A DNA stretch of 64,000 nucleotides from assembly GCA_051294905.1 (NCBI GenBank), contig CM119378.1:14632001-14696000 (forward strand), in the 5' to 3' direction. A program made the translations under genes and the position numbers. Of this stretch, positions 10,671-61,030 are shown one piece after another. Position 1 is the stretch's first letter. Every line of letters starts with the position of its first letter. Under the pieces are notes generated by a model. It was not told where the DNA came from and searched no databases. It saw only the letters and a program-made list of their open reading frames with translations. This stretch comes from Botryllus schlosseri (Eukaryota).

Positions 10671-11143
10671 ACTACGAACAACAACGAGTACTGAAAATGT
10701 CGTTGTGTTGACTAAAATTAAAGGTCATTTGCCATTGATATACTCTCGAATGACTCGCTCGAACTCCGCATTACAGATTTCGCGTCATTCGCGTTTTTTA
10801 ATTCAGTCTGTCCATTAGCTTTCAAAGCTATAAAGTAGGACGAGGAGACACGAACACTGGGAATCCGCACACCGTGAGCATTTCTCAATCACCATTCAAC
10901 GTATTCAGTCAACTATCACGCAATCAAGAAGCCAGAACGCTGACAGGCAGTGAAAGCGCACTTGTATTGTATCCTAGAAGTATTCAAGTATTACGTAAGA
11001 AATGAAAATTACAGACCGCACCGCAGACCTTCACGCACATCGGTCAAAATGAAATACGTAATGCCGCCCCATTTCGAAATTGATTTCTTGCGAGCAGAGA
11101 AGAAAATGCAGAAATGACGATATTGTCGCCATACAGTGTGACG

Positions 11144-13370
11144 TCATCCTCGCTGCGTCTTCTTCCCAGCTGCCCCTTTCTGAACGACCGCGTACACGTC
11201 GCCACCTTGCGGATCTGTGCGCACGACCTGCGCGTACGTGTCGGTCACCGGAGGCGATCGAGAGTCGTCCGCCAGATCGTACTCGTTCTGCGCCTCCTCG
11301 TGTGACGTCACAAGGTCGGGTCTCGCGGCCTCGTCATAGAGCGGGTTGTCGTTGGTCTGGCGCGTATCGTCGGCGGATCGTCTGTCTTCTTCTTTGTTCC
11401 TGCGGGAGAGAATGGGAATGTTCCTGGCAACTGTCAACGCTAAATTTCGGATTCGGATTCAGCGCCCCAAATGACCCAAAGAAATCATTCCACAGATATC
11501 GTGCAACGTTATCTGTCTGCAATTTACGACTAACAAACCGCGTCGTATCGCGCAACTATACACCTCCTAGACCAGTGGTTCCCAACCGGGAGGAATTCCC
11601 CCCTTGGGGGGAATTTTGAAATTTTTATGGGGGAATCTGGCTAAATTTTTTTAGGGGAAATCTGGCTTTGGCATTGTATCGGAAGATACACTTGGTTCAC
11701 AAGGTTTTTAGATTTTTATGGTATAGAACTGTCAAGTAGAAATTAGTTCTTTACAATTGTATATTTCTTTGGCGGATTTCAAGCTAGGTGTATGTTTAAA
11801 TGCCTTTCGTAGATATTACACCCCCTGATAAAGTGAGGCTCACGAGACGATTTCGTTGGGTCCACGACAGCAGCCTCTCAACCAAATTGCTATTAAGTAG
11901 GAAAACGTCAAGTCGAATTCAGCGCAAGGCCGCTAGTGAAATTGTTTCAACTTTTTAAGCCAACATATGAGCTAACGTGAAAAACATACCGTACCAAATT
12001 CATCGATTCCCCTTAAGTCCATATCAAGCGGACTTGGTGATTTATTCTTCGTCAGCGGCTACTCGACCGGTCAAAAACAGGTCAAATTTGACTGTAATTA
12101 ACCAAAGTTTAGTGCGGTCCGCATTCGCCATAGTTCGGACACATCTGAATATATTTGGCCATTAATTGCTCAGTCAACAAATGGTTGCGAGCGAAAAAGC
12201 ACATTTTTTTAGTCACAGGCAACTTTTTCATAGGGGGAATTTTAGCTCAAATATCGGACAAGGGGGGCACGAGACGAAAAAGGTTGGGAACCACTGTCCT
12301 AGACATACTCAAAATAACAAAAGCCGATTGACCAAGTTGACTCTAGTTTGTTCAAGTCTTCGCGTTATGACGATGAAATCGGCTTTTCTGTCAAATTACT
12401 ACAGAACTTAACTTCAGATTAACTACCTGCACTTCACAGTCCAATCTCACCTTTTGCACCGAAATGCAATGATTGCCAATACCACAATGAAAACAATCAG
12501 GCCTCCAACTATACCTCCAATGATACCCGCGTATGGAAATGAACGTTGTAGTTGCGGCAATGACGCCGTGTTGTTGATCTGTGCTTCGGTTGTGCCTAGA
12601 CAGGAATACAGCGTTTCAGGTTACTACTTACTGCACAGGAAAGTGATTAGACTGCACTTTCTATCTCTCCGACTTGAACTAGAGATGTGCTTCCACTGCC
12701 AACAGTACATTTCGCGGGTTCCTTCACTTCGCCGCTGCACTGAGACAGTCGAACCGTAATGTTCCATCCGTCTTGCTTGTGTGTAAATGACTCTAAAGCG
12801 ACAAAGTCAGGAAAGGCGATAATGTTATTTCAAAACCAACTTGATTCTCCGCATTCCCTAAATCTCGTCAAGTTGTAGACGTTCAATTTGATTCTGTAAA
12901 CTTCTATAGCCGTCCAAGTGCAACTAGAGTCCGCTGGAGTCGCGTAGTTTGATTCATTGCTTGTTTTCCATATTACGGGGCACTGCCCGGCCACCATCGG
13001 AGCAGTCACTGTAAGCAAAGTATCGGTTATCGGCGTATAACAGTATCGATAAGCACACAAACCTGCTATTTTCACGATTACTAACAGTAGCTCCAGTATG
13101 ACGGAACACTTTGAACTAATCCGAACCTTATACTCAAGAAAACTAATGGTAATCATGTAAAATTTCTGAATTTTATATAACTTGAATCAACTTCAGTGAG
13201 ATATTTTCATTTACCCCGTTTGCCTCATCCGCTCACGTTTATCTGCTGATCACTGACACGCAGCTTGTTCAACACAAAAAATATGGAACATACACTTTTC
13301 TGCGCTCATATCGGCCACGACAACTGCAACAAAAGCAATTTTGAGGAAATCCTACCAGACTCGCAACCAT
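11144..13370 (-). CDS. Type I membrane receptor-like gene: signal peptide, CUB-like ectodomain, TM, tail with 4 Tyr motifs; this copy has an apparent +1 frameshift in exon 1
   Basis: Predicted exons 13370-13294, 13008-12841, 12792-12658, 12595-12451, 11399-11144, with consistent phases (1,1,1,2). TM GIIGGIVGGLIVFIVVLAIIAF followed by RCKR. Tail contains NPLY, EYDL, DTYAQV and DVYAVV. Ectodomain SNY..P.DSSCTWT....YRIKLNVYNL...C ... DGWNITV resembles a CUB fold (inference). The last two exons are strongly supported; the donors at 12840 and 12657 are weak. Confidence 0.65.
11573..12296. mobile_element. hAT MITE (724 bp) in the last intron of the receptor-like gene
   Basis: TIR CAGTGGTTCCCAACC; perfect TSD TCCTAGAC (11565-11572 and 12297-12304). 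Confidence 0.9.
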
Positions 13371-13499
13371 GGCGAAGGCAACATTCTTTCCATTGCTATT
13401 TTGACAACGCTGAGTCAGCCATTTCGCCTTACTTCCTGCCATTTAGATCGGGTTTCTGGCAGCAAACTTTCACCAACAATAGCAAGTAGATGACATGCT

Positions 13500-13505
13500 T
13501 TTATT
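13500..13505 (-). terminator. Candidate polyadenylation signal (AATAAA) of the adaptor-like gene
   Basis: AATAAA on the minus strand about 400 nt after the stop at 13908 and about 130 nt before the next ATG at 13370. Confidence 0.4.
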
Positions 13506-13907
13506 GTTCTTGGTACTGAGGCTAGATAAATAGAACTGAATTCTAAAATCCGTTAACTATAGTGCGATGTGAACTATAGCGCTTGCGATTACTGGATCTG
13601 ACATCTCGACCTTGCCTTCCTAGTCCCACACATGGCACCTCAATAACGTCATCTCCCATAACTTTCCCTTCAGTGTGCTTTTTACATCGCCCCCAGGATG
13701 TTTGATTTCAAAGACTATATACTCAGAGTTGTTTCCTAACTTTTCACTGCATCGCAATCTTGTGGTGTTTTGAAGCGATGAAATTATCAATAAAACTTAT
13801 GCATGTTTGAAAAAGGACACGGTCGGTCTATTCAACGTTCGAAATGCGATAGGTCTCATCAAGTATTGAAAAACACTTAGGACTATCGCGAGGATGTGTA
13901 TTGAAGT

Positions 13908-15419
13908 TCATTTTGCGTGGGAAGAGCCAGCGGATACGTTGACTTGTTCGTACGCTGAACCCTCTTGTAATGTCTTAGACGCGTTGGGAATATCTTCGTA
14001 ATTACGAATTGAAGCTTCGTACGTCTCGTAAGCTCCCGCCGCCTGCTCGTCTGTATGCGCTGCCATGTCGATTGCAGGCGTGTCGACTTGTTTGTGGTTC
14101 CTGAACCGTCTGATGCTGAAATTTGAGTGTCGTTTATTGACGACTTTGCAGCAGCGAACGTTGGAAACTCACTTTCTCGTGCCAACGACGATAATTTCAA
14201 CGAACATCATTCCGATCGCACCGCCGACAATCGCCACCGCGGCCACGTTCGAACATTCCATACTTTTGCTTCTAAACCACGAACAAACCTCGAGCTAATC
14301 TACTTCCTGCTATCTGAACGTTTGACTCATCTAGTGCGCAGAAAAGATCGCGTCGCAACACTGAAACGCGCATGATGTCATGCTTTGGCGTGAGAATGGC
14401 GTGAGTCGCAGCAAGCAAGCAACGCTCTCTGATAGGGGCATTTCGACGCAGGGTCCTGGTATCAGGGATGTCCCTGCCTGGTATAATTGATGTCGCTTAC
14501 TGATTCGAACCGCGATTAATCGAGGCAATACATTTTTTCGGCTTTCTGTAGCTGGTCTACAGGATGACAAAGAAAATTGGTAGAACATCTAGGAGTCGTT
14601 TCTGGGGTTTTCAAGGTTGCTAATTACGAATATCACATTGGTTTCGCCAGATTGGCTCTAGAAGAGAAGATATTTATATCCATAAAAAGCTTAAAATCAC
14701 TGTATTTACCCTTGAATATTTCACTTGGTAGGACGTAAATCTTAGATTCTTCTACTTTTATACTGCGCATAAATAGATAATTGACTATGATGAACACTCA
14801 TGTCGTTTTCAGTTATTCCATCAAGCATGACCTGATCCGTGAACTTTGTTTGTTAAAAAAGCAGTTTGTCAAGCCTAAAAATTGTACTTTTGCACAATGG
14901 AAATATATTTTCTCCTGTACCAATTGGTCATTCTACCAAGATGAAAGAGGAGTATAAAGCTATCAAGTTCGTCCCTGGAAAGCTTAACTAAAGTACTCGT
15001 ATGCGTCTCATCTCTTTTCCCTTGTAAATGGATGATTTTCCATAAAGCCAACAAAGTGAGTATACCTGGTATCCATATCAAACGAGAAGCTTAAATCTGG
15101 AGTCTTTGAGGGATCTCAGATTCGAATACGGACTAAGAATTACAATTTCATATTAGGAAAGGTGATCACTGCATTGATGTAGTAAATAAAACTTTTTGGA
15201 AGATCACAAAGCACCCAACTATACAAACAGTTGGTCCGAGAATTGGTATATGCATATGGAAACCTTGGAGTAAACATGAGCATTAAATCTCACTTCCTGT
15301 TCAGTCCTCTTGATATATTTTCTGATAATATTTTTGATTAGAGGGAGTGGAAAGGAGAAAGGTTCCACCAATACATAACAACCACAAAAGAAAGATATCA
15401 GTGAAGATGCGACGAACAT
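13908..15419 (-). CDS. Small single-pass adaptor-like protein (about 162-172 aa): signal peptide, short Cys ectodomain, TM with Glu, ITAM-like tail
   Basis: Predicted exons 15419-15294 (MFVASSLISFFCGCYVLVEP..., donor GTGAGA), optional 14657-14628, 14556-14501, 14271-14173 (SKSMECSN-VAAVAIVGGAIGMMFVEIIVVG-TR, donor GTGAGT), 57-nt intron, then 14115-13908 (NIRRFR...AYETYEASIRNYEDIPNASKTLQEGSAYEQV...AK stop). All junctions are GT-AG and phase-compatible. The TM and tail exons are the best supported. Confidence 0.7.
14801..15301 (-). repeat. Right arm of the inverted repeat; occupies intron 1 of the adaptor-like gene and overlaps its exon 1 donor
   Basis: Reverse complement of 10191-10670. Similarity ends at 15301, 8 nt inside predicted exon 1. 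Confidence 0.85.
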
Positions 15420-18400
15420 ATTATGGCAGACTATAGCTGGAACCTTTCGAAAAACTGCACTAAATTGCTTACAACCGAAAATAGTACAAGAACCAATTTT
15501 CCTTTAAGATAAGTTAATAATATATTATTCCAACTGATTATTTCGAATTTAAAATAGTCTCCGATTATGATAAATCTAATACCACGAGATATAATTCTGT
15601 TGATGTATTTTGAAACAGTCTTCAGCATGTCAAAATAACAAGCAGATTGAATTTCTGAACTTTATAGTACGACTGAGCCGATTTTTTATTATCCAGCCCA
15701 TACAGCCAAAATATGAGATTTTAGTAATATTAGTAACGTATTTACAATAGCTATTTATAGACGATAACTGTAACCGTTTATGACCACTACAACGAAGATG
15801 TCGTTTTAGTTGATTGAAACGTGTTGTGAAAAACCTAGCGTGGATCATATATGATCCACCCGCTGGTTAACTGAAACCATTTCACTTGCGAAGATTAGAA
15901 ATTGTATTTTGGTAAATTGTGATTGCCCAGATTGAATAAATTATATCGTGTCCTTGTTTACAGTCAAAAATAAAAATTATTAAATAATTATAAATTTCGG
16001 TTTTAGATGAAGACTGTATAGTGTATATACCGTCTAATTTGAATTTGCCCGACACAAATCTGTTCTGAGCGGCCCTGGAATTCAAAATAAATAATCTACC
16101 ATTGACTGTTAATGCGTGGACTAAAACCGACTGAACTGGAACTTCGTTTACTTTGAAGACTGTTTATTTATGTGCCGCGATTACGTAGCCTACGTACGTC
16201 CATGCGTAGGCTATAGTCCCTATTCAAAATAAAGTCAATGTAGCGAAGTATACCGTAATAATTGAAGTCACAAGCAGTCACTGTTTCCATATAGTCCAGT
16301 TCAAATCAGTGCTCGTGATTGAGTCATCATCAACCATAAAGTAGGGATGGTGTGAACGTGTGCGGTTCACGTTCGCGTTCTGTGTGTGAACCTCAGAAAT
16401 GTGGAGGTTCACGTTCACAAACGAACCTTGGAAGGTTCTGCACTGTGAACCGTTTTCATATATTACAGTCTTCACTTCATTATAACATCTTTGATTGCAA
16501 TTTATTGCATTCAACTGCAATACTACTATGCATAAAGTGCTTTCATATTGAATCTTCAGGTAAAGAATCGACACTTAATTATTACACAATCATGTGAATT
16601 ATAGCTAAAGACAGCTGTAGTCGAGACTCGAGAGTCGAGACTCGTAACAAAATTGAGGTGAGGCGGAGAGAAAGTTCAATATAAACGCGGCTCAGTAGTG
16701 TATTCGCCACTTCTCTTCGCTTATTTACATTAGCGTCGGATTGCTTGAGACGCGTCCTGTATATCAAACCTGTGTATCAAACCATTGAGCCGTGACCGAT
16801 CTATCCTACAACAATCTCGCAACAATATTGTTGCACGCACAGTTGTTGAATAACTTTCTAAATGTCTTGAGCAATACGCCGGATATGTTGCAGGCAGATG
16901 AAAGTTGTTGCAGTGTAGTACAGTACAATGCAGTGGTAAATCGGTAATGTCGTCGATAGTTCCGTCGTCTGACGATTTATTCACTATCTCACTTCGGTGC
17001 GTATGAAGACTGTGTGATGAATGGGCGTCACTTCAATTCAATTCAATTTATTGCTAACAATTTCATCATTTCAATACACCACAAGACTGCGATACAATGC
17101 AAGATAGGAAACTGTCGAAACGACTTGGAGTAGTCTTCGAAATCACACACCCACTTGGCCTAGGCGATGTAAAAAATGAGGCATGTGCACTGAATGAAAA
17201 GTAAAGAAGATAATATAAAAGGTCAGGCGACAAAAAGAGGTGGCATGTGTCGGAAGGCGAGATCGATATTTCAGGTCGTGATCCGGTAAACTAGAGCGCT
17301 GACTAGTATTGATCCAGTGATAGTAATTGTTTGTATTTCGACTTAAATGTGGATATGGACAGGGACATGCTCGATCACTGTAGGATAGCCGGCGAGATAC
17401 TATTTCACAGTGCAGGCCCGGCATATTTGATAAAGCGATGATCTTATTTGTCGGCCTCGGCCATATGGTAGTTGGACGACGTGGGCGGGCGTCTGTTGTA
17501 CTTTAGTACTTTGTACTTATATATACACTTTTGATAGCGAGTTAAGAAGCCATTGGCAGTGACCACAGTGGAACTGATAGCCTATACATAACTTATCAAT
17601 TTCTAAGTTTTGGCATATCTTTTATGTTTAGGACACCGAATGTTTTGAGCAGTAATTTGTTGGACACACATCCTGGCCCCTGGCCCTGGCTATGATACTT
17701 CACGCATTGTCTATAGTTCCTGGTATAACTATTTTTATAAATTCAAAACACCGGAATACTACGATTAAATGAAAAGATAGGCACCCACGTTGACCTTATT
17801 TACATGCTGTGGGCCCAGAAGGGTGTCTAATCAAAATACCAGGGGAAGGTGGAGCACAATGTGCCCAAAACACAATTTTAGTCATAAATATATTTCGAAT
17901 CCAGAAATACCAATGAACTTTAGCAAAACGACGGATGAACATTAAACGTATATTTCCAAAGAAAGAAGATTTCAAAATACGAAGAAATAACGAAATCACA
18001 GTCACTTGAAAAACTTACCTTTTTTGTCCAATTATGCCCCATAGCCATAAGTCATCTAAAACACAGTCGAAAGGTAGCGATGTAAATTAACGCAGGCAAA
18101 ATTAGGAAACTCGTCATTTACTCATAAAGATAGCGACCCTGGCGAAATCAAACCACATCAGGACTACACCTGATATAACATTACATCATCGAAGAGATGT
18201 ATATTATTCCTGTCGGGTTTTTAAAATATTCACGATGTACCATTGTACTCCTGTATCCATTGCGCCCCGTCTTCCCGGGGTTAAGAATAACATAAGCTAA
18301 CGAAAAAGACAAGAAATTAAACTTAAGTGGCATGTATCGATGATCGAGGTATAGATATATGCCTGATCGTGATCTGATAATCTCGAGCGCATACCAGTAT

Positions 18401-20362
18401 GGTACGACCAATGCTTTTTTGATAAGTTTAAACCCTATTGTCCTACAATGGTGTGGTCTCAAGCAAATCTCATGGCTTATTGCGATTGGGTTACATCTCA
18501 CTTTCCATTTGACCGAAGGCGGTTTTGCGGCAATTTTTGACCGGCTTTCCGAGCGCGAAAATTGATGAAACTGGTGTCAATTGAAAGCTACCGTGGTACT
18601 GATTGCGAAAGTATTAATTTTTCTCGTGCTAGTGGTCCTGGAACCCCAAAAATCAGTCTCGAATTTTGAACTGTAACTGAGTTTGATATTATGACGCAAT
18701 AGTGCAATCTGTAACCAAGTTATGAGCTGCGCAAACCGCAAGCGTATTGGCCATTGTTACACAAGCGATTAAGCATTCACACTCTCGATGTGCAACGTGC
18801 ACTTGTTCCTGTTTTGCGACATACTATTCAAAGAGACGCTTAGGAGTACAGAACTTCATAACACATTTGAATAAAATATTCATATTTATTCCCGAAGCTT
18901 TTTATGCCAACAGAAAGAATTTGTGAATCATTTGAAAATCGCGCATTAACTTGTTTTGCTTCGCTATCTCCATGCCAACGCTTCAGTTCTCTCGTTTTCC
19001 TAACTTTGTATATTTTCTGTGTGACGTCATAATTAGCGATATATATTGTTGTTCAACATAGTTATTCGAATTCTCGCAATATTGCTGACGATATCCCGTG
19101 ACGAGGGTCAGCCGAAAAGCTTCGGGAATAAATATGAATATTTTATTCAAATGTGACATACTATTCCCGATGGCTTTGTTCCGTCACAATGCAAAACACC
19201 GTTACAATGAAAAATTTGAAGTTGATTTTGACGGGTGCTAGAACAAAGAGCACAATAAAATTTATATTTTACGTAATCAGTACCACGGTAACTTTCAATT
19301 GATACGATTTTTTTCGTGTTTTTCGCCGAGTAAGCCATGCTTACTAGTGCCGTAAATTGCCTTTGGGCAAATGGAAATAATGACGTGAACCATGTCCTAC
19401 GAAAAACAAGGCCTCACACCCAACCTTTTGACCTGAACATTAAGAGGGCGAAAGTCGATCTTTCAACCCTTACCAGATGTGCACTTCACTGGTCAAAAAA
19501 TGCCATATTGCCATAATACTTCCTGTTTCTGGCACTCTACTAACACACCAAGGCAGAATGCTTGTAAAAATAGTCTATTGCAGGCATATATAAGGGACCA
19601 ATACACATATACTGCATGACGAGATGCACATTGCGCTTCATAAGTATGGTGCATATAACTGAAGAACGATATCAACGAAATCTGTTATGTAGAACTATGC
19701 AAGTATACACATTGAACTCCAAATGGCATGGTACATATAAACTGAAAATATTAGCAACGAAATGAGCACAACCAATGCAAATTAATACAATAAAATCTGC
19801 ATATCTTGAGAAAAGTATTTGCAAAGCTATCGAATTTGAGATTCAGGAAACAAATTTGTCAAGACATTACTACACGATCATTTCTTTTTGTCTTTGCCTC
19901 TGTCTACATTGGCAAACATGGTCTTCTCTGAGGAAGGAATGTACTAATTTCTGCATATTTTTATTTAAAAAAAGACTACAGTTACCTGCAACGCCGCAAC
20001 TGTTAAATTTTTGCAATGTTCATTACAAGCGATTCGGGATTTACCTATCACGAATTTTTATACAAATAATATTGCACGTCACAGTTAGATATCAGCTGAT
20101 TAGACGAATCTGGAGCAGGGGAGGAATAGAATATGTAACGCGTGAACGAATCGCAATGAGGACACTGTGGTTAAACTAACCGTCAATGACATTACAGACA
20201 AACGTTCTTCGGCGTGCTCGTAACTGACGTTACTAAGGCCTTGAGGTTGCGTGGTATACCACATTATAATGTATATATCGCCGCATAGTTGACAGTTAGA
20301 ACATTGCATGTGTGCCAGGGTTATACACGTCCATAATGATATTTATTGATTCTGTATAGGTG

Positions 20363-23300
20363 ATGCTGGATTCCGTTGGCCTGTACCAATTACTAGCGGT
20401 AGCGTTGGTACTGTTGTTCGTATATTTTTGCCGTAATCGTGAAAATCGACCACCAGGTCCATGGGGACTTCCAGCTTTGGGCTACTTACCATTTATCGGT
20501 AAGTATCCTTCCAGAAGGTATTTTGAACTGTCAAAGAAATACGGACCTATCATTAACGTGAAACTGGGATCTAAGAATATCGTCGTCCTTAACGACTACG
20601 AAAGCATACAGGAAGTAAGTCGTTCTATTTCTCTACCAGATATGAGTAAGATTGCTATAGCAACCCTATATTTCACTTTTTTACATCTCATGCATATTAA
20701 GGCGCTTGTAAAACAAAGTGACGTATTTTCCGATCGACCCCGCAACGAGTTTATTCACAAAATGACCGGAGGTTACGGAATGATCTTCCAGGAGTTCAAC
20801 GAGGAGTACAAGATTCAAAGAAAGTTCGCTCTTGCAACTTTGAGGGGGTATGTGCGGATTCCAACTGAATAAACTGCCCGACTAATCGGGCGGATTTAAT
20901 GTAGGCTTGGGGTTGGAAAACGAAGCATGGAAGGCAAGATAATCGAAGAAATTGAAAAATTATGTCACGAAATTGGATCACGAAACGGACAACCCTTCAA
21001 TTGCCAAGTAATAAAATGATTTTTCTCTAAACATGAAAAACATCAGTAATGGACCACAAGAACATTTTAGCACTGGGCAGTAAAGTAATTTACAAAATTG
21101 TAAAGTTGTTGAGATGTTTTTTTTCTTGTTATTGTTTAGTTTACTTCTTTTGTTCCTCCTAACGATATATTCATGTTGCCATATTTATTCTACCTCAAGC
21201 TGTTTCGGCATCACTTGCGAACGTCCGTGCATGCGAAAAAGTTGAAGAATATTTTCACAAAATGGCAAGGAAATCGACTCTTGAGCGGCATATGACCACG
21301 CAAACTTAACAGTGAAGGCCCAAATTTGGCGATAAAATACCCGAAGACGATCGCTATGCGAATAAAATATTCCCATGCAGTCATCTGTGTCAGATTGCGA
21401 AGATGACTAGTCTCAATTTCGAGTTGAATATCATATTGTTCCCGTCTAGATAACTGGTATTGAGTTATTAGCTATTGTATCAATTTGTTAACGCCGTTAC
21501 GATAGCCTATCGCATTCCTTTTTGGTCCTCGTGAAACATGTAACATTCATTGCAGGAAACTCTGTCTGCTGCTGTGTCAAATGTAATATGCAATGTCGTT
21601 CTGGGGTCACGATTTTCGTACGATGATGAAGATTTCAAGGGAATGCTGAAGGCTGTTAATGCGGAGTGAGTTATCTGCATTACAAGACATAATATCATAT
21701 ACTTGCACGGGCTATTGTTTATTAGGTTCTCGGATAAAATATATGCATTTTGTGTCAATATGCTAATGCTCGCACCTCAACTAAGATTCATTCCGCCATT
21801 TTCTAAAGCACACAAGCGGATATTCGAAGATATAGATTACGTTCTTGGTGAGCGACCCTTTTCATTGCTATGCATGGAGCGTGATTTTAACACTGATAAC
21901 TAGATTTACAAAATTGATTCGGTCAAAAACATGCGCAAATGAGCGCACGGAGCTCGCACGTCAGTGCAAATTGGCTGCAAAAACAGACTGCTATGATGAT
22001 TACCAAGCATATGCTTCGTCAATCGGTCAGCATCTGAGCGAAAACCTTGCCTGTGCACAGCACTATGATGACAATATGTTCACTGTCATTGCGCGTGGTA
22101 GGTCTGTGTTTCATTTAAAAGTGTTGGAGTCTACTATTATTCAGTTGAGCAAACCTATTTTATGCAGTCAGAAAGATTTCCTCTATAACCTACAAATTTC
22201 TCATTAGTGCGTGTTGTTCCGTGCGTGTAATTGTTTATTTACAAATTGTGCTGTTACTATAGTACCGTTTGTCCGTATACTTCGTAGTTTGTGATTGTTG
22301 CCATTGATACAATGCGAATTTCATGGTCTGTGATTTTGATTGTTGCGTCATACTTTGCCTTTTTGGTTTTGCTTTTAAATCTGTTTAAATCCCTTCAGTG
22401 TGCCGATAACTCTTGAAAAGAGGCACCCGAAAAGTCTTCGAGTTTAATAAATATACTGCTACAATGGATGTTGTATTGAAAGCTATTTACAAATATGATG
22501 TTGGATATTATTTGTATCCATTATGATGCTATCCAGTGGTCGGGAACCTTTTTCGACCGAAGAGCCATATTGACACAATATTTCCATCTATAACTCCCAA
22601 AGAGCCATACATGTCAATCAACTGTTACGTCACAATTGAATATTCGTGACGTATTGGTAGCACTAATATATGGGATTCATAGTTTGCGCCATATTTTTCC
22701 CGTATGCGTAGCTGGAGCCAAACAGGTAATTGTCAATGTCACTTCTAAGGAAGTTTACTTTATCGGCGTAGAGCAGGAAGTCAATGTGTATTTGAAAACT
22801 GCATTGTCCAACAAGCGTCGCCATGTCAAGGTATCAAACAAGGTATCGTGCAATTCAAGATTTCGAGGCGCGCGATGGCGGGTATCGATCGAATTTGCCA
22901 GTGGTTTCAGTCGCCGGCGCGACAGCAACTTAAATTTTAGGATTTTCGAATGGGGGGTAACGAACCCCATACCCTGCTTACCCAACTGTGTTAACCTCTC
23001 AACGACATGTTTATGCTGCCAAGAGAATAATTATCCGGGTCGTCATCGAAATTTACTAACAAGTTGCAGCAATATTGATAAATTGAGTACAAAATTAAAA
23101 ATTTGTCTTTTACCCAAAAGAGCCACATATGGCTCGCGAACCATAGGTTCCCGACCACTGCAGTATAGACTATAGACAAAGTCAACGGCAAGTCTGGATA
23201 CTGTCAGTCGCTTATTACATCCTACCATTACTTCCTGCCGTAATTGCAGTATACAGTTTCCTAATATATTTCATATCATAATGCAAAAATAAAAGCAAAT

Positions 23301-26300
23301 GCTCCAGAAATTTTCCGATGTCTGATATTATCACTGGCGAACAACATTTCACTGGATTTTTTTTAAATGAGAACGTGAGTTTGTGATTTTCGGTATATTT
23401 TTCACTCTGATTCCAAATCTGCCAATAATTTTTTTCTAGCATATCATTTTCAAGATATCACCGAACTTGTACTTTCCAACGAAATAAAAGAAAATATAGA
23501 TGTGTACAGCTATTTTTCATGACCTTTAAACTGTTTAGCATATGATTTTCTTGTACACATTACCGAGATCAACACGATAGAACGTCCAGCCGCATTCCCA
23601 CATTATTACCTCATTACAAAGATCTTGGTGACGAGCTCCCACTTCCATAGTTCGAATGTCCTGGGGAAATGGTTCAGTTAGTTCTTCATTAACTGCACCA
23701 TATACAAGCATTGTACTGAATAGTAGGGATTGTGTGAACGTGAGGTTCACCATCGCGTTCTGTGTGTGAACCTCCGAAATTTACTTTCACAAACGAACCT
23801 TGGTAGGTTCTGCAGTGTAGACCTTTTTCAGGTATTACATTTTTCACGTCATATAACATCTTTGGTTGGAATTCTTTGCATCTCACCTTCGGCCCACTCT
23901 ATGCATGGCGCTGATAGCATAAAAATTCAAAACTACACGAGCATGCACCTTGTCGATCTCAAAATCTTTACTTGCTTTGTTACAAAAGTTTGCTCGCAAT
24001 AATCAGCTCTACGTTTGTGAATATTTAGTGACTCTCTACCGTGAGCTTGACCCGCAATCACACAACATCAAGAACGAACGAAATACACTACACGTATGTA
24101 GTCATCGAATGATGCTTATTACACCAATCAATGAAATTGATATAAAGAATACATCGTTGTCTAATGTCAAAAATTTCGATGGCGTACGGGATCCATCTTG
24201 ATTTGACATGTTTATTGTAACATTAAAACCGAATCCGTGCGATTGGGTACTCTATAGCTTGTTTATGGGGTAATATTGGTAGCAAGTATAGAAACCCGTT
24301 TTACACTCTGCTCAAAATCAATATAGTAAATTTAGTAATGGTCGGACGCCGAATATATTGTCCGATCTGGCCTAGGCCGTTAAGGCGTAAGCTTATATTC
24401 CCATGCAAATCGAAATTGCTGGCAAAGCCACGGAAGAGATTGCTTTTAAGCGATTATTATAGCATTTGACTGCTCCAGTTGATACATTTGGTGACGTTTA
24501 AAAATTCAGCATGCTGTAGCCTTCAGCAATATGGCATGATTGTGGCCTGGGTCGTCGCTAGGTATCTGGTATATCACTTCACTGAAATGTAAGGTCGGAA
24601 TTATCAATATGACATCACGTGACGCCATAGGTTCACGTTAACGTTCACACAGAACCTTTCAAAAACGCTCGCGTTCACACGAACCTGAACCTTTTAGGGG
24701 TTCGTACCACCCCTAAAATAGCTTCCAAAAGGACTTCGATGCTTTCATAAAATTGTTTCGAGTGAACGTGCTATAGGATCTGACAGTCTTATATTTCTAT
24801 CATGCGACAATACAGCGTTTCACCATCTCTTCGACGAGTCGCTGAAATAAATCTTTTCTCATTCAAGAAATTTTGAGAAAGATATGGGAGGAACACAAAA
24901 GGTCACTGGACCCCGAGAATCCACGAGATTTTATTGATGAATACTTGATTCGTATGCAAAGTAATGATACGAACGACTCATCGTTCTGCGTGAGTATGGG
25001 CTAGCTAGATCAGGAGTAAGCAACATAAGGTCAAGGGAGGTTTACATTATTACATTATAATGGGGCCCGCTGCCACATCAATCTGCTACTATGCTTGTTT
25101 ACCGCGTCAAATGGTTTTAGTCAAATTAGTTTCAGTTTAATTCTAATTTTCCTGTAAGCACTTATGCTAAATATACATAAATACATACGCTATGTTTCTT
25201 CATAAATGGCCTCCGTGAATCTGGCGGTATTTTTCTTTAACTCTACAATAATTCTTCCGCGAGCCACTATCCGCGGATTTTGCAGAGAAACATAGACCCT
25301 GACAGGTTGACAAGACGGTACTTGTTTTGTTAGGGTATATCAAACATTTTTGACAATAAATATTAATAAGCCAAAGCTTCGTTCCAATCTAACTAATTGA
25401 CTCAAGTATTCTTCACTGGGTAGGTCTTGTACGTAGGGTTGCACTTAAAACAAACGGTGTTTGTTTTAAACAAAGCCTTTTAAAAAAAAATTGGGTTTTT
25501 TATAAGTTGTAAAACTATGCCATAATTGTGTAAATTTTCCAAAAAACATGCTGTATGAGCCTACGGACAATTACCACCCGATATCGTCGAAGTATATCGA
25601 TGTGACGATGTGGGATGCTTGGAACCCTCAAAATAGTCGGTTCAACAGCAATAGTACAGACATTTCGTCAAAGGAGCTATATTTACCCTATATTTTCAAT
25701 TGCCAATGTCAACCCATTATGACGTCACAATTAAATATTCCTGACGTCCTAGCTTTAAAAAAAACATGTTTTAAACAAGGGCCTATCGTTTTAAACATGT
25801 TTGTTTTAAATTGATTTTTGTTTTAAATGCAACCCTACTTGTATGCAGCTTTAATTCTTGAGAGAATATTGAAAATTTTGAGCGATCACAGATGCCCCAT
25901 TGACTTGAGCATATATTGAAGTATACGTTACACTTTCATTCATCAAGTTTTGTTTCTATGCCAACAATGATCGAGAGATTTGTTTCGCCAACCGATGATA
26001 AGAAATTAATAAAGACGGATTACTTGTATGCACGGATGAATACTCGATTTCTATTACGATTCCAGAATCCTGCTTCCGTAGCGCTGGGGAATCGCACAAA
26101 TTAATCGGCGACTCCTATACTTCCTACTCTTAGCAATTGCAAATTGCTTCTGCGGTTCTGTTTCCGACTCCGAAAAATCAAATTTCGTGTCTCATACTCC
26201 TACACCTCCGACTCTCACGTGGCCGAAATTTCTCACATCAACCCCCGAGTCCTCCTCAATTATGTCAATAACTCACTTTTCGACACTCGCAACTAGAACT

Positions 26301-27907
26301 AGAACAAAGATTCAATTACAATACAGTCGGCATTTTAAAAGGACGGGGTTTCGAGTTTGAAATGGGACGTGTTTCGATACCCGTTGCGCCGAGGTGGTTG
26401 CTCAACCCCTGACAAGGTATATTTAGGGACGGTGCGAACGTGAGGCTCACGTTCGCCTTCTGTGTGTGAACCTCATAAAATTGGAGGTTCACGTTCACAA
26501 ACGAACCTTGGTAGGTCCTTCACTGTGAACATTTTATTAATAGATATTTAATATTGAGATATTTCAACATCTTTGGCTGAAATTATTGCGTAGCTAATCT
26601 GTTTGATCCCTCAAGTGTTGTACAATGCGAATGTCGTGTTTGAGATCATAATTGTGACGCCACGTGACGTCAGAGTTTCGTGTTCATGTTCGCGTTCACA
26701 GCCAACCTTCTGTGTTCATACGAGCCAAAACCTTTCAGGGGTTCGAACCATCCCTTCGCTGTAGCAGTTTCAAACCAACGAGGCCTTTTTCTAGGAAAGA
26801 CAACTCTATCAAATAGTTCGAGATTTGTTTGTTGCGGGAACGGAAACGACTTCGAGCACTCTTAGATGGGCCATGCTGGTTTTCGCCCATCGTCCAAATA
26901 TCCAACGTAAAGTCCACGAAGAAGTTAAAAAAGTTATTGGTAATTTCAAATTATGCTTTGTTAGTGACTTTACTAGCAACGTGTGATTGTTTTTGCGGCC
27001 GTTTGACATCACCATCCTTCGGCAATAATATGAGAGTCTTCAAATTCAGCATGTACTGGCAAATTATTTAGTCGTCTGAAACGTAACACTGTCGAAACGT
27101 AGTCGGAATGATTGATGTACAACATTGCTGACAATCATATAGTTACGTGATCGGATCATACTATGGCATAACTCATTTCGACACGATTTGCAATAATGAC
27201 TAATGATGGTGGATTTTCAATGCTGTTACGGACTGGTTCTTACTCACTTTAACCAGTGAACATGCCTTATTTATAGCCTGCTACGTAGTCATACCAATAC
27301 CTGACAAGATATGTGATCCACTGGAATTGGACGTTGTTGAAATCCATCTAACAGTAAGAATAATTCCTCAGGTGATGGATTGCCCTCAATGAAGCACAAA
27401 GATGACACGCCGTATGTGAGCGCGTTCATCCTCGAGCTTATGAGACACAGGACTCTGGCTCCTCTCGCAGTCCCTCACGCGACTGTCCGAAATGTGACAT
27501 TTCGCGGATACGACATGGCGAAAGGGCAAATGGTAAGCAAAAAAAACTGTTATTTTTCGACAACTGTTGTCATCCTGAATTGTTTACAGGTTTTGCCCAA
27601 CATATGGGCGGTCCACCACGATCCGAAGAACTTCGAAAATCCGTCGGAATTCAATCCTGAACGGTTTCTGGACGAAGACGGGAAATTCAACAAACATCGA
27701 AGAGTGATCCCTTTTTCAGTCGGTCCTCGATTCTGTCTTGGAGAACAGCTTGCAAGAATGGAAATATTTCTCTTCCTAACCAGCATAGTTCAACGCTTTG
27801 AGATTGTTCCCGATTCGTCTAGACCGTTGCCCGAATTAGACGATGGCAATTCCGGACTTACAGAAGTCCCGAAGATGTTCGATGTCTCGTTTAAAGCTAG
27901 AATATGA
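20363..27907 (+). CDS. Cytochrome P450, CYP2 clan, paralog B (intact, 492 aa, 9 coding exons)
   Basis: Exons 20363-20614, 20702-20847, 20905-21007, 21556-21665, 21726-21847, 24868-24989, 26795-26939, 27372-27532, 27590-27907. All introns are GT-AG; total 1479 nt, in frame. N-terminal TM anchor, PPGPWGLP proline hinge, I-helix AGTETTS, K-helix ELMR (ExxR), PERF, heme motif FSVGPRFCLG. Confidence 0.95.
22534..23160. mobile_element. hAT MITE in CYP-B intron 5
   Basis: TIR CAGTGGTCGGGAACCT at both ends; no TSD match found; absent from the paralogous intron of A. Confidence 0.7.
25434..25837. mobile_element. hAT-type MITE (404 bp) in CYP-B intron 6
   Basis: TIR TAGGGTTGCA.TTAAAAC; TSD CTTGTACG / CTTGTATG (7 of 8 match). 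Confidence 0.8.
26424..26757. mobile_element. MITE of the TAGGGA(T/C)GGTG-GAAC family; relatives at ~16343-16460 and ~23724-24715
   Basis: Shared GTGAACGTGAGGTTCACGTTCGCGTTCTGTGTGTGAACCTC block and an imperfect TIR. Paralog C has the empty site ATATTCGCTGTAGC. Confidence 0.65.
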
Positions 27908-60334: not shown

Positions 60335-61030
60335 ATGGGCCGTAAGTCATTTGATGCAAATGAACCGGTACGCAAAAGTCGTGATGTACTTGATTCAACT
60401 CGAATCGAGCTTATGCTGGATCGTTATGCAGCAAATATATTAGGAGAGCCGGAACCACATTTGCAAGCCGAGCATGTAAAATGCTCAACCGAAGCATCGA
60501 AAAACGAGCAGAAAGAAGCAAATAGTTCTAAAAAAGAACCTGAGGTTGTAGTGTTTAACTCGCGATCCAAATCTAAACAGTCCTACCTAAGCAGTCATAA
60601 AATAATGAAAAACATAGTGTCTAAGCAGAACGATGATTCCAATTCAGCAAAGTTAACAAACGGGCGGCTAAATTCGTCTGAGGTTCTGCAAAAACTCAAG
60701 TTTGATGTCGGCTCATTTGGAATGAAGGCTCTTTCCAAAGAACAACAAAGAGAAAAAGAGAAACGAAGAGCCATAAGATTGGGAGCAAAGCCCCCAAAAC
60801 GAAAATCGACTAATTACAAGGACTATATCGAAGAACGAAAAAGATTGAAAGAGACCGCCACTGACAATGCTATGCAATCACAGGAGATGAAATCGAGAAG
60901 CAAGAATCTGCCTCAGCCTAAATTTTGGAAAGAAGGTAATAAAAGTTTATCGGCGCAGGTCGGGAAATACAGAAACGGTGTTCTGAAGCTCTCCTCTAAA
61001 GATATCAAGTCAATTAGTAAGCGACGATGA
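60335..61030 (+). CDS. C1orf131: C1orf131/DUF4602-like small-subunit processome assembly factor (231 aa, single exon)
   Basis: Uninterrupted ORF with family-like motifs EVVVF, KFDVGSFG, AIRLGAKPPK...NYK and C-terminal QVGKYRNGVLKLSSKDIKSI. Assignment is by motif recognition; no search was run. Confidence 0.8.
   Translation: MGRKSFDANEPVRKSRDVLDSTRIELMLDRYAANILGEPEPHLQAEHVKCSTEASKNEQKEANSSKKEPEVVVFNSRSKSKQSYLSSHKIMKNIVSKQNDDSNSAKLTNGRLNSSEVLQKLKFDVGSFGMKALSKEQQREKEKRRAIRLGAKPPKRKSTNYKDYIEERKRLKETATDNAMQSQEMKSRSKNLPQPKFWKEGNKSLSAQVGKYRNGVLKLSSKDIKSISKRR

What the first reader, a model, noticed from the sequence alone, without database searches (positions are those of the whole stretch)
13908..15419. 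DAP12/FcR-gamma/CD3-zeta-like architecture in a small adaptor gene
Predicted product: signal peptide, a short ectodomain ending in a juxtamembrane Cys (MECSN), a 22-residue TM with a GxxxG motif and a buried Glu (FVEIIV), a basic stop-transfer (RNIRRFR), then YEDI-x12-YEQV preceded by YETYE. Established: DAP12, FcR-gamma and CD3-zeta combine a tiny Cys-linked ectodomain, an acidic TM residue and an ITAM. Caveats: the canonical ITAM spacer is 6-8 residues and here it is 12. YEDI and YEQV are also Src-family SH2 sites, so a LAT/PAG-type adaptor is an alternative. Similarity is architectural; homology is not shown.
Basis: partly seen in the sequence, partly recalled or inferred. Interest (0 to 1): 0.75.

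Follow-up and report, generated by a model that had tools for sequence, protein, structure and literature searches.

The report
Small leaderless membrane protein with tyrosine motifs
This is a real, expressed two-exon gene for a 98-residue single-pass membrane protein whose tail carries four Tyr-Glu motifs, so it looks like a small signalling adaptor, but it has no signal peptide, no canonical ITAM and no detectable relatives, so any kinship with DAP12, FcR-gamma or CD3-zeta is unproven.

Summary
RNA joins them in exactly the predicted frame across a 57-nt intron (14172-14116): three contig runs from three studies plus 53 raw reads.

The proposed signal-peptide exon (15219-15419) is not part of the gene:
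- It lies in an interspersed repeat with at least 1018 candidate copies.
- No read joins it to the gene.
- RNA cover stops near 14390.
- Contigs run unbroken from the coding exon through 14319.
- In-frame stops precede the ATG at 14261.

The product is therefore 98 aa and leaderless. It has a 5-residue N-terminus (MECSN), a 22-residue membrane span with GGxxG and a Glu six residues from the inner end, a basic stop-transfer, and a 71-residue acidic tail. In that tail every Tyr is followed by Glu (shuffle P = 2e-5).

This architecture fits leaderless transmembrane adaptors (TRIM, LAT, LST1 type) better than DAP12, FcR-gamma or CD3-zeta. The YEDI-x12-YEQV pair is not a canonical ITAM, and SAYEQV fits the ITIM consensus.

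No homologue turned up in any protein, Pfam or PDB search. The only paralogue (contig C4) is decayed. Orthologues could not be reached, so conservation is untested. The adaptor function is inferred, not shown. The scan noted this same stretch once more under another title.

The parts
14262..14390 (-). 5' UTR. The transcript start is near 14390. It contains three upstream ATGs (14381, 14373, 14330), all closed by stops before the main ATG.
   Evidence: Raw-read cover falls to 0 in 14433-14631, and five molecules end at 14390. Contigs run unbroken across 14173-14319. The upstream ATGs were read. The main ATG has A at -3 and G at +4.
14173..14261 (-). Coding exon 1 (codons 1-29 plus two bases of codon 30). 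It encodes Met-Glu-Cys3-Ser-Asn, the membrane span V6-G27 with G13-G14-x-x-G17 and Glu22, and then Thr-Arg.
   Evidence: Translation. Kyte-Doolittle 19-residue means reach 2.44. The exon end is fixed by the RNA joint.
14116..14172 (-). 57-nt GT..AG intron, entered after the second base of codon 30.
   Evidence: The joint 14115->14173 ('CT..AC' on the + strand) is seen in runs X1, X2 and X3 and in 53 reads of X23. The donor reads AA|GTGAGT and the acceptor TTTCAG|C.
13908..14115 (-). Coding exon 2. It encodes the basic stop-transfer (N30-K38), an acidic tail with Y59/Y62 (YETYE), Y69 (YEDI) and Y85 (SAYEQV), and the stop at 13910-13908.
   Evidence: This stretch has the highest RNA depth in the locus, about 80 reads.
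13626..13907 (-). 3' UTR. No canonical AATAAA was found. Depth drops about four-fold below roughly 13835.
   Evidence: A contig of X2 spans 13626-14115. The depth table is and the motif scan.
14391..14530 (-). Probable promoter region. It is 91.5% identical to the C4 copy, above the roughly 85-87% seen in the neutral flanks.
   Evidence: Regional identities. The duplicated segment ends at 14530.

Best explanation
This is a lineage-restricted gene for a 98-residue leaderless (type III, N-terminus outside, C-terminus inside) single-pass membrane protein. It most likely works as a small phosphotyrosine-dependent transmembrane adaptor.

Shown:
- The mRNA, its splice and the reading frame.
- The absence of a signal peptide.
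- The hydrophobic span with GGxxG and Glu22.
- The charge asymmetry: about -1 on the N-terminal side against +5 just after the span.
- The non-random Tyr-Glu pattern in the tail.

Inferred:
- The span acts as a reverse signal-anchor, leaving only M-E-C-S-N outside.
- Cys3 and the GGxxG face could hold a homodimer, as in TRIM, SIT or LST1.
- Src-family or Syk-type kinases phosphorylate the acidic Tyr sites.
- pYEDI and pYEQV (pYExI/V class) then dock SH2 proteins. Candidates are Src-family kinases or Csk, or an SHP-type phosphatase through S-x-Y-x-x-V.
- Glu22, which sits roughly opposite the GGxxG face on a helical wheel, may contact a partner membrane protein.
For: - Splice joint and transcript limits.
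- ORF, residues and coordinates.
- Hydropathy, tail composition, all four Tyr followed by Glu at P = 2e-5, and a good start context.
- The false first exon lies in a repeat.
- TRIM is described as leaderless, with an 8-residue ectodomain, Cys7 forming the dimer, and SH2-binding tyrosines. LAT is type III (PMC2212462).
- Syk and Src kinases that act on tyrosine motifs have been described in amphioxus (PMC13344425). This is relevant only if this genome is an amphioxus, which is inferred and not verified.
Against: - There is no homologue of any kind, so conservation of Cys3, Glu22 and the tyrosines is untested.
- The only paralogue is decayed.
- Ka/Ks against that copy is 0.76.
- Listed coding polymorphisms are 5 non-synonymous to 3 synonymous, which is not distinguishable from neutral (P = 0.26).
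- Up to three upstream ATGs precede the start codon.
- There is no juxtamembrane CxxC palmitoylation site and no YxN motif, unlike LAT-type adaptors (read directly).
- Translation, phosphorylation and dimerisation have not been observed. The dimer model gave no verdict.
- YxxΦ also fits clathrin-adaptor sorting signals.
Confidence: 0.45

Rival explanations
1. A DAP12/FcR-gamma-type activating signalling chain. Glu22 would pair with a Lys or Arg in the membrane span of ligand-binding receptors. The doubly phosphorylated YEDI-x12-YEQV pair would recruit the tandem SH2 domains of Syk.
For: - An acidic residue lies in the span, a Cys on the outer side, and two YxxΦ motifs 12 residues apart.
- Such a pair arises in only about 1.1% of shuffles.
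- Looser ITAM definitions allow spacers of up to 12 residues (own knowledge).
- A Syk homologue that binds an ITAM-bearing receptor is reported in amphioxus (PMC13344425).
Against: - There is no signal peptide or ectodomain.
- The spacer of 12 lies outside the canonical 6-8, and the second motif ends in Val rather than Leu or Ile.
- Pfam gave no family hit, ITAM included, at E up to 10.
- Nothing in the PDB is similar.
- The acidic residue is a Glu in the inner third of the span, whereas these chains carry an Asp in the outer half or middle (own knowledge).
- The adjacent receptor-like gene has no basic residue in its span. Its C4 copy stays intact while the adjacent small-gene copy has decayed.
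Confidence: 0.12
2. A small membrane protein whose YxxΦ motifs (YEDI, YEQV) are clathrin-adaptor sorting signals. It would be a trafficking or accessory subunit rather than a phosphotyrosine scaffold.
For: - Both motifs fit YxxΦ with a bulky hydrophobic residue at +3.
- The tail is short and unstructured-looking, and no SH2-specific feature such as YxN or YxxM is present.
Against: - Glu follows every one of the four tyrosines, including two that are not YxxΦ (YETY, YEAS). Sorting signals do not need this, but acidophilic tyrosine kinases and pYExI/V-binding SH2 domains favour it (own knowledge).
Confidence: 0.15
3. A young or decaying transcript whose ORF has little or no protein function, such as a de novo or fast-evolving orphan. 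On this reading the motif pattern is not under selection.
For: - No homologue was found in 1.84 billion representative proteins, apart from spurious matches to repeat proteins.
- It is absent from the 5.8-billion-protein collection.
- Ka/Ks is 0.76.
- Listed coding variants are 5 non-synonymous to 3 synonymous.
- The sister copy on C4 has already lost its membrane span, reading frame and stop.
- Upstream ATGs precede the start.
- Both UTRs are about as conserved between the two copies as the coding sequence.
Against: - The ORF stays open across a precisely spliced junction.
- It encodes a strongly hydrophobic 22-residue span with correct positive-inside flanks, an unlikely chance product.
- The Tyr-Glu pattern has P = 2e-5.
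- The start context is good.
- It is expressed in runs from at least four studies.
- No well-supported variant was listed in coding exon 1, although 84 variants were not shown.
Confidence: 0.25

Closest known systems
TRIM / TRAT1 (T-cell receptor interacting molecule) and, by recall, LST1/A and SIT: leaderless or tiny-ectodomain, disulfide-linked transmembrane adaptors
   Same: - Both lack a leader.
- Only a handful of residues lie outside (8 in TRIM, 5 here), including one Cys (Cys7 in TRIM, Cys3 here).
- A single span is followed by basic residues.
- The cytoplasmic tail carries several SH2-type tyrosine motifs (PMC2212462; this gene).
- By recall, LST1/A is of almost the same size (about 97 aa) and carries ITIM-type motifs.
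   Different: - There is no sequence similarity.
- TRIM's span lacks charged residues, whereas this one has Glu22.
- TRIM uses YxxL and YxxM, whereas this tail has YE-x-I/V.
- Dimerisation is not shown here (one search gave no verdict).
DAP12 (TYROBP), FcR-gamma, CD3-zeta, DAP10: ITAM or YxxM signalling chains
   Same: - The exposed part is very small and carries a Cys.
- There is an acidic residue inside the span.
- The tail has two YxxΦ motifs.
   Different: - Those chains are type I with cleaved signal peptides, whereas this protein has none.
- Their acidic residue is an Asp in the outer half or middle of the span (own knowledge). Here it is a Glu six residues from the inner end.
- Their ITAM spacer is 6-8 with Leu or Ile at +3. 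Here the spacer is 12 and the second motif ends in Val.
- No Pfam or PDB similarity was found.
LAT / NTAL / PAG / LIME: palmitoylated type III raft adaptors
   Same: Type III topology, a minimal ectodomain, and a tail that serves as a tyrosine scaffold.
   Different: - There is no juxtamembrane CxxC for palmitoylation.
- There are no YxN (Grb2/Gads) sites.
- The tail is far shorter, at 71 residues.
- No homology was found.
- It is therefore not a functional stand-in for LAT in the SLP-76 pathway, for which no LAT-like molecule was found in amphioxus (PMC5431462).
Syndecan / glycophorin-type GxxxG membrane spans
   Same: The GGxxG motif in the span is of the kind that drives helix-helix dimerisation (own knowledge). 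The neighbouring gene's span gives a sub-threshold Pfam Syndecan match.
   Different: The small protein itself gives no Syndecan match and has none of the conserved syndecan cytoplasmic motifs.

Membership tests
DAP12/FcR-gamma/CD3-zeta-type signalling chains | Cleavable signal peptide followed by a short ectodomain (type I) | tested here: not met
   The proposed leader exon lies in a repeat with at least 1018 candidate copies. No RNA joint reaches it, cover ends near 14390, and contigs are continuous across 14173-14319. In-frame stops precede the ATG at 14261.
DAP12/FcR-gamma/CD3-zeta-type signalling chains | Extracellular Cys that forms the disulfide-linked dimer | tested here: inconclusive
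   Cys3 is present on the predicted outer side. Dimer modelling gave no verdict. The disulfide cannot be tested in silico.
DAP12/FcR-gamma/CD3-zeta-type signalling chains | Acidic residue (Asp) in the outer half or middle of the span, pairing with a receptor Lys or Arg | tested here: inconclusive
   An acidic residue is present, but it is Glu22, the 17th of 22 span residues, in the inner third. The adjacent receptor-like gene has no basic residue in its span. Partners elsewhere in the genome were not searched.
DAP12/FcR-gamma/CD3-zeta-type signalling chains | Canonical ITAM: YxxL/I-x6-8-YxxL/I | tested here: not met
   The pair is YEDI-x12-YEQV, and the strict pattern is absent. Pfam gave no family hit, ITAM included, at E up to 10.
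DAP12/FcR-gamma/CD3-zeta-type signalling chains | Detectable sequence homology | tested here: not met
   No hit. Only spurious repeat proteins appeared.
Leaderless (type III) transmembrane adaptor proteins, an architectural class | No signal peptide, an N-terminal ectodomain of a few residues, one span, positive-inside flanks | tested here: met
   The RNA-defined ORF starts at MECSN. The span covers residues 6-27 and five basic residues lie within the next 11. The topology itself is inferred.
Leaderless (type III) transmembrane adaptor proteins, an architectural class | Several tyrosine motifs in the tail that become SH2 docking sites | tested here: inconclusive
   Four Tyr are present, all followed by Glu (P = 2e-5), and two are in YExI/V form. 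Phosphorylation and SH2 binding cannot be tested here.
LAT/NTAL/PAG/LIME subgroup | Juxtamembrane CxxC palmitoylation motif, and YxN sites in LAT and NTAL | tested here: not met
   There is no Cys after the span and no Asn at +2 of any Tyr. Pfam matched no family at all.
ITIM-bearing inhibitory adaptors (for example LST1/A or SIT type) | [S/I/V/L]-x-Y-x-x-[I/V/L] | tested here: met
   S83-A-Y85-E-Q-V88 fits the consensus by direct reading. A single short-motif match of this kind is weak evidence.

The most novel reading that the evidence does not exclude
An invertebrate-lineage orphan gene has independently assembled a hybrid immune-type adaptor. It would combine a leaderless TRIM-like Cys-linked dimer, a charged residue in the span for pairing with receptors (as in DAP12), and a wide-spaced ITAM/ITIM-like YEDI...SAYEQV pair that engages Syk-, Src- or SHP-type SH2 proteins. 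That would be convergent invention of the signalling-chain principle outside vertebrates.
Probability: 0.12. Interest if true: 0.7.

Novelty: new member of a known kind. Interest (0 to 1): 0.38.

Why it matters
Tyrosine kinases and SH2 adaptors of the antigen-receptor pathways (Syk, Src/Lck, SLP-76, GADS, Itk) have been characterised in amphioxus. The membrane-bound scaffolds that feed them are largely unknown, and one study states explicitly that no LAT-like molecule could be found (PMC5431462).

Small leaderless adaptors evolve fast and escape both gene prediction and homology searches. This gene is absent from the protein collections searched.

If this genome is indeed an amphioxus (inferred only) and the protein is phosphorylated, it would be a concrete and cheaply testable candidate for such a scaffold. 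If it is not translated or not conserved, it is just one more fast-evolving orphan ORF.

Tried and rejected
Rejected. It lies in a repeat, no joint or cover reaches it, it is outside the C4 duplicate, and its phase does not match.

2. **One transcript shared with the downstream receptor-like gene.** Rejected. RNA cover is near zero in 13239-13636 and no joint links the two.

3. **The neighbouring gene as the charge-paired receptor.** Rejected. Its span has no Lys or Arg. Its C4 copy is intact although the small gene next to it has decayed.

4. **The small gene as a fragment duplicated from the neighbour.** Rejected. BLASTP gives E = 1.2 and E = 71.

5. **Homology searches.** All were blank or spurious:
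   - the word-indexed 5.8-billion collection with the tail;
   - phmmer against 1.84 billion representatives, where the nine hits are bacterial or other repeat proteins that score by summed repeats;
   - Pfam;
   - the ESM Atlas, with best scores of 0.87 and 0.86 to unnamed clusters, below the level that means anything;
   - PDB sequences.

6. **Reaching orthologous loci through the neighbouring gene's ORF.** Nothing was found. A blank there says little, because only proteins of 59-189 aa were eligible.

7. **Homodimer model of the 30-residue exon-1 peptide.** Score 0.11 against a mark of 0.32, so no verdict. It is not evidence either way. The last residue of that peptide was Lys, read from the intron, rather than the true Asn.

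8. **The full spliced 98-aa protein as a query.** It could not be submitted by reference, so the searches used its two exon products separately.

9. **The organism's name.** It is withheld. 'Amphioxus' is my inference from the genome size (495.5 Mb), notes spread over 19 pieces, 41% GC, very short introns and heavy polymorphism.

Full report
**What is in the sequence.**

The gene lies on the minus strand. An ATG at 14261 opens a reading frame that encodes Met-Glu-Cys-Ser-Asn, followed by a 22-residue hydrophobic stretch (codons 6-27, 14246-14181). That stretch contains G13-G14-A-I-G17 and Glu22, and Thr-Arg follows it. A GTGAGT donor follows at 14172.

Fifty-seven bases further on, a TTTCAG acceptor opens a second exon (14115-13908). 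It continues in frame with Asn30 (the split codon), IRRFRNHK, and an acidic, Ala/Ser/Thr-rich tail that ends at a stop at 13910-13908. The tail holds four tyrosines: Y59 and Y62 (YETYE), Y69 (YEDI) and Y85 (SAYEQV). The spliced CDS is 297 nt, giving 98 aa.

**RNA evidence.**

Twenty public runs of the same organism, from seven studies, hold part of 13600-14320. I laid four of them on 11050-17000.
- The joint 14115->14173 skips exactly 57 nt, with GT..AG on the minus strand. It appears in assembled contigs of three runs from three studies and in 53 raw reads (37 distinct starts) of a bulk RNA-seq run.
- Raw-read depth is about 80 over 13836-14034, about 50 over 14035-14233 and about 30 over 14234-14432. 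It is zero over 14433-14631, and five molecules end at 14390.
- Contigs cross 14173-14295 and 14173-14319 without a break.
- No joint leaves the region upstream of the ATG.

**The 'signal peptide' is not part of the gene.**
- The ORF at 15419-15219 has essentially no raw-read cover.
- It lies in an interspersed repeat with at least 1018 candidate copies at 85-92% identity.
- It lies outside the segment that is duplicated on another chromosome (see below).
- The frame upstream of the ATG at 14261 has stops.

The product therefore starts at MECSN, with no leader and no ectodomain beyond five residues. With about -1 charge before the span and five basic residues in the eleven after it, the positive-inside rule predicts an outside N-terminus and a cytoplasmic tail. 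That is a type III protein. The topology is inferred, not shown.

Caveats on translation: the start context is good (A at -3, G at +4), but up to three upstream ATGs (14381, 14373, 14330) precede it. Two of these lie within about 20 nt of the apparent cap site.

**Is the motif pattern more than chance?**

I shuffled the 71-residue tail 100,000 times.
- A YxxΦ-x6-12-YxxΦ pair appears in about 1.1% of shuffles.
- All four Tyr are followed by Glu in only 0.002% of shuffles.

The Tyr-Glu pattern is the most non-random feature. It is what acidophilic tyrosine kinases and pYExI/V-binding SH2 domains prefer (own knowledge). The strict ITAM pattern (spacer 6-8, Leu or Ile at +3) is absent. SAYEQV fits the ITIM consensus by direct reading.

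**Relatives.**

Within the genome (495.5 Mb) there is one other copy, on contig C4. It belongs to a duplicated segment of about 3.5 kb, roughly 80-87% identical, corresponding to window 11100-14530. The segment also carries the downstream gene.

The C4 copy of the small gene is decayed:
- A deletion removes the second half of the span together with the donor, most of the intron and the acceptor.
- A 5-nt insertion shifts the frame before the YEDI site.
- The second Tyr-Glu is changed.
- The stop is lost.

The C4 copy is nevertheless transcribed. Thirteen reads that run off the window sequence at 14113 match the C4 junction.

Ka/Ks between the two copies is 0.76. Coding and non-coding parts are about equally similar. 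That is the expected picture if one copy is a pseudogene, so it gives no test of constraint.

Listed coding variants in the RNA runs are five non-synonymous (A44T, D46N, S65P, I66F, G93C) and three synonymous. None touches a Tyr, Cys3 or Glu22. The ratio is not distinguishable from neutral (P = 0.26).

Outside the genome, nothing was found:
- no candidate in the 5.8-billion-protein collection;
- only spurious repeat proteins among 1.84 billion representatives;
- no Pfam family at E up to 10, for either exon product;
- no PDB chain;
- only sub-threshold Atlas neighbours.

Orthologous loci in other species could not be reached with the tools.

**Surroundings.**

About 750 bp downstream on the same strand lies a separate gene, 13156-11144. 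RNA joints confirm its introns at 13062-13009, 12840-12793, 12656-12595 and 12449-11399.

It encodes a type I protein of about 265 aa. It has a leader, a Cys-containing ectodomain of about 130 residues, a Gly-rich span without any charged residue, and a tail with NPLY, EYDL, TDTYAQV and DVYAVV.
- RNA cover between the two genes is near zero (13239-13636), so they are separate transcription units.
- They are not homologous to each other.
- Each exists in two copies only.
- The C4 copy of the receptor-like gene keeps an open frame, and all its indels are multiples of three. The small gene beside it has decayed.

Together with the lack of a basic residue in the neighbour's span, this argues against an obligatory receptor-adaptor pair of the DAP12 kind. 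The intact small gene could still serve in trans. Cytochrome P450 exons lie at 20360-27907. The neighbourhood is not a recognisable immune cluster.

**Interpretation.**

The anatomy is a leaderless protein with five residues outside (including a Cys), one span, a basic stop-transfer and a short acidic tail studded with Tyr-Glu. This is the anatomy of the small type III transmembrane adaptors.

TRIM is the closest documented parallel: leaderless, with an 8-residue ectodomain, Cys7 forming the dimer, and SH2-binding tyrosines (PMC2212462). By recall, LST1/A is of nearly identical size and carries ITIM-type motifs.

Two features are shared with the DAP12/FcR-gamma/CD3-zeta group: an acidic residue in the span and a tandem YxxΦ. 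Four defining features were tested:
- leader: not met;
- canonical ITAM: not met;
- homology: not met;
- position and type of the acidic residue: inconclusive.

I therefore do not file it in that family. It also lacks the palmitoylation CxxC and the YxN sites of LAT-type adaptors. It would not fill the 'missing LAT' role noted for amphioxus (PMC5431462).

My best reading (0.45) is a TRAP-like phosphotyrosine scaffold, possibly a Cys3/GGxxG dimer. The rivals are:
- a functionless or barely constrained orphan ORF (0.25);
- a small membrane protein whose YxxΦ motifs are sorting signals (0.15);
- a true DAP12-style ITAM chain (0.12).

A dimer model gave no verdict.

**Verdict.**

The finding is a real, apparently unannotated small gene of a known architectural kind. 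It has an unusual Glu in the span, and its function rests entirely on motifs. Interest is moderate (0.38). It would rise if orthologues conserve the key residues or if phosphorylation is shown.

Noticed in passing
window 11144-13156 (-): A separate downstream gene, confirmed by RNA joints, with introns at 13062-13009, 12840-12793, 12656-12595 and 12449-11399. It encodes a type I protein of about 265 aa with a Gly-rich uncharged span and a tail carrying NPLY, EYDL, TDTYAQV (ITSM-like) and DVYAVV. There is no Pfam family apart from a sub-threshold Syndecan match on the span. Its paralogue on C4 keeps an open frame, with all indels multiples of three. Ka/Ks is 0.64.
   Followed up: partly
G000:C4:8586552-8590084 (L006/L007): A duplicated two-gene segment, about 80-87% identical to window 11100-14530. 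The small-gene copy there is decayed: the span is half deleted, the frame is shifted and the stop is lost. It is still transcribed, since 13 RNA reads match its deletion junction.
   Followed up: yes
window 15150-15450 and 16340-16520: Two different short interspersed repeats, with at least 1018 and at least 906 candidate copies in the genome at 85-93% identity. The second has very high depth in RNA contigs (about 2100 in run X1). ARAGORN found no tRNA-like gene in 14400-17000. The element types were not determined.
   Followed up: partly
window 13741-13773: A 33-nt island in the 3' UTR. About 35 RNA reads run off to the left and about 32 to the right into sequence found neither in the window nor in the C4 copy. 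It could be a haplotype structural variant, or a short element shared with another transcript. It is unexplained.
   Followed up: partly
window 14272-14381 (-): Three upstream ATGs in the 5' UTR, giving short uORFs that all end before the main ATG. The two I checked in the alignment (14373 and 14330) are conserved in the C4 copy.
   Followed up: no
window 20360-20872, 27380-27907 (+); 60335-61030 (+): Cytochrome P450 exons (Pfam PF00067, E = 7e-14 and 8e-44), and an ORF matching FSAF1 (PF15375, E = 2e-14).
   Followed up: no
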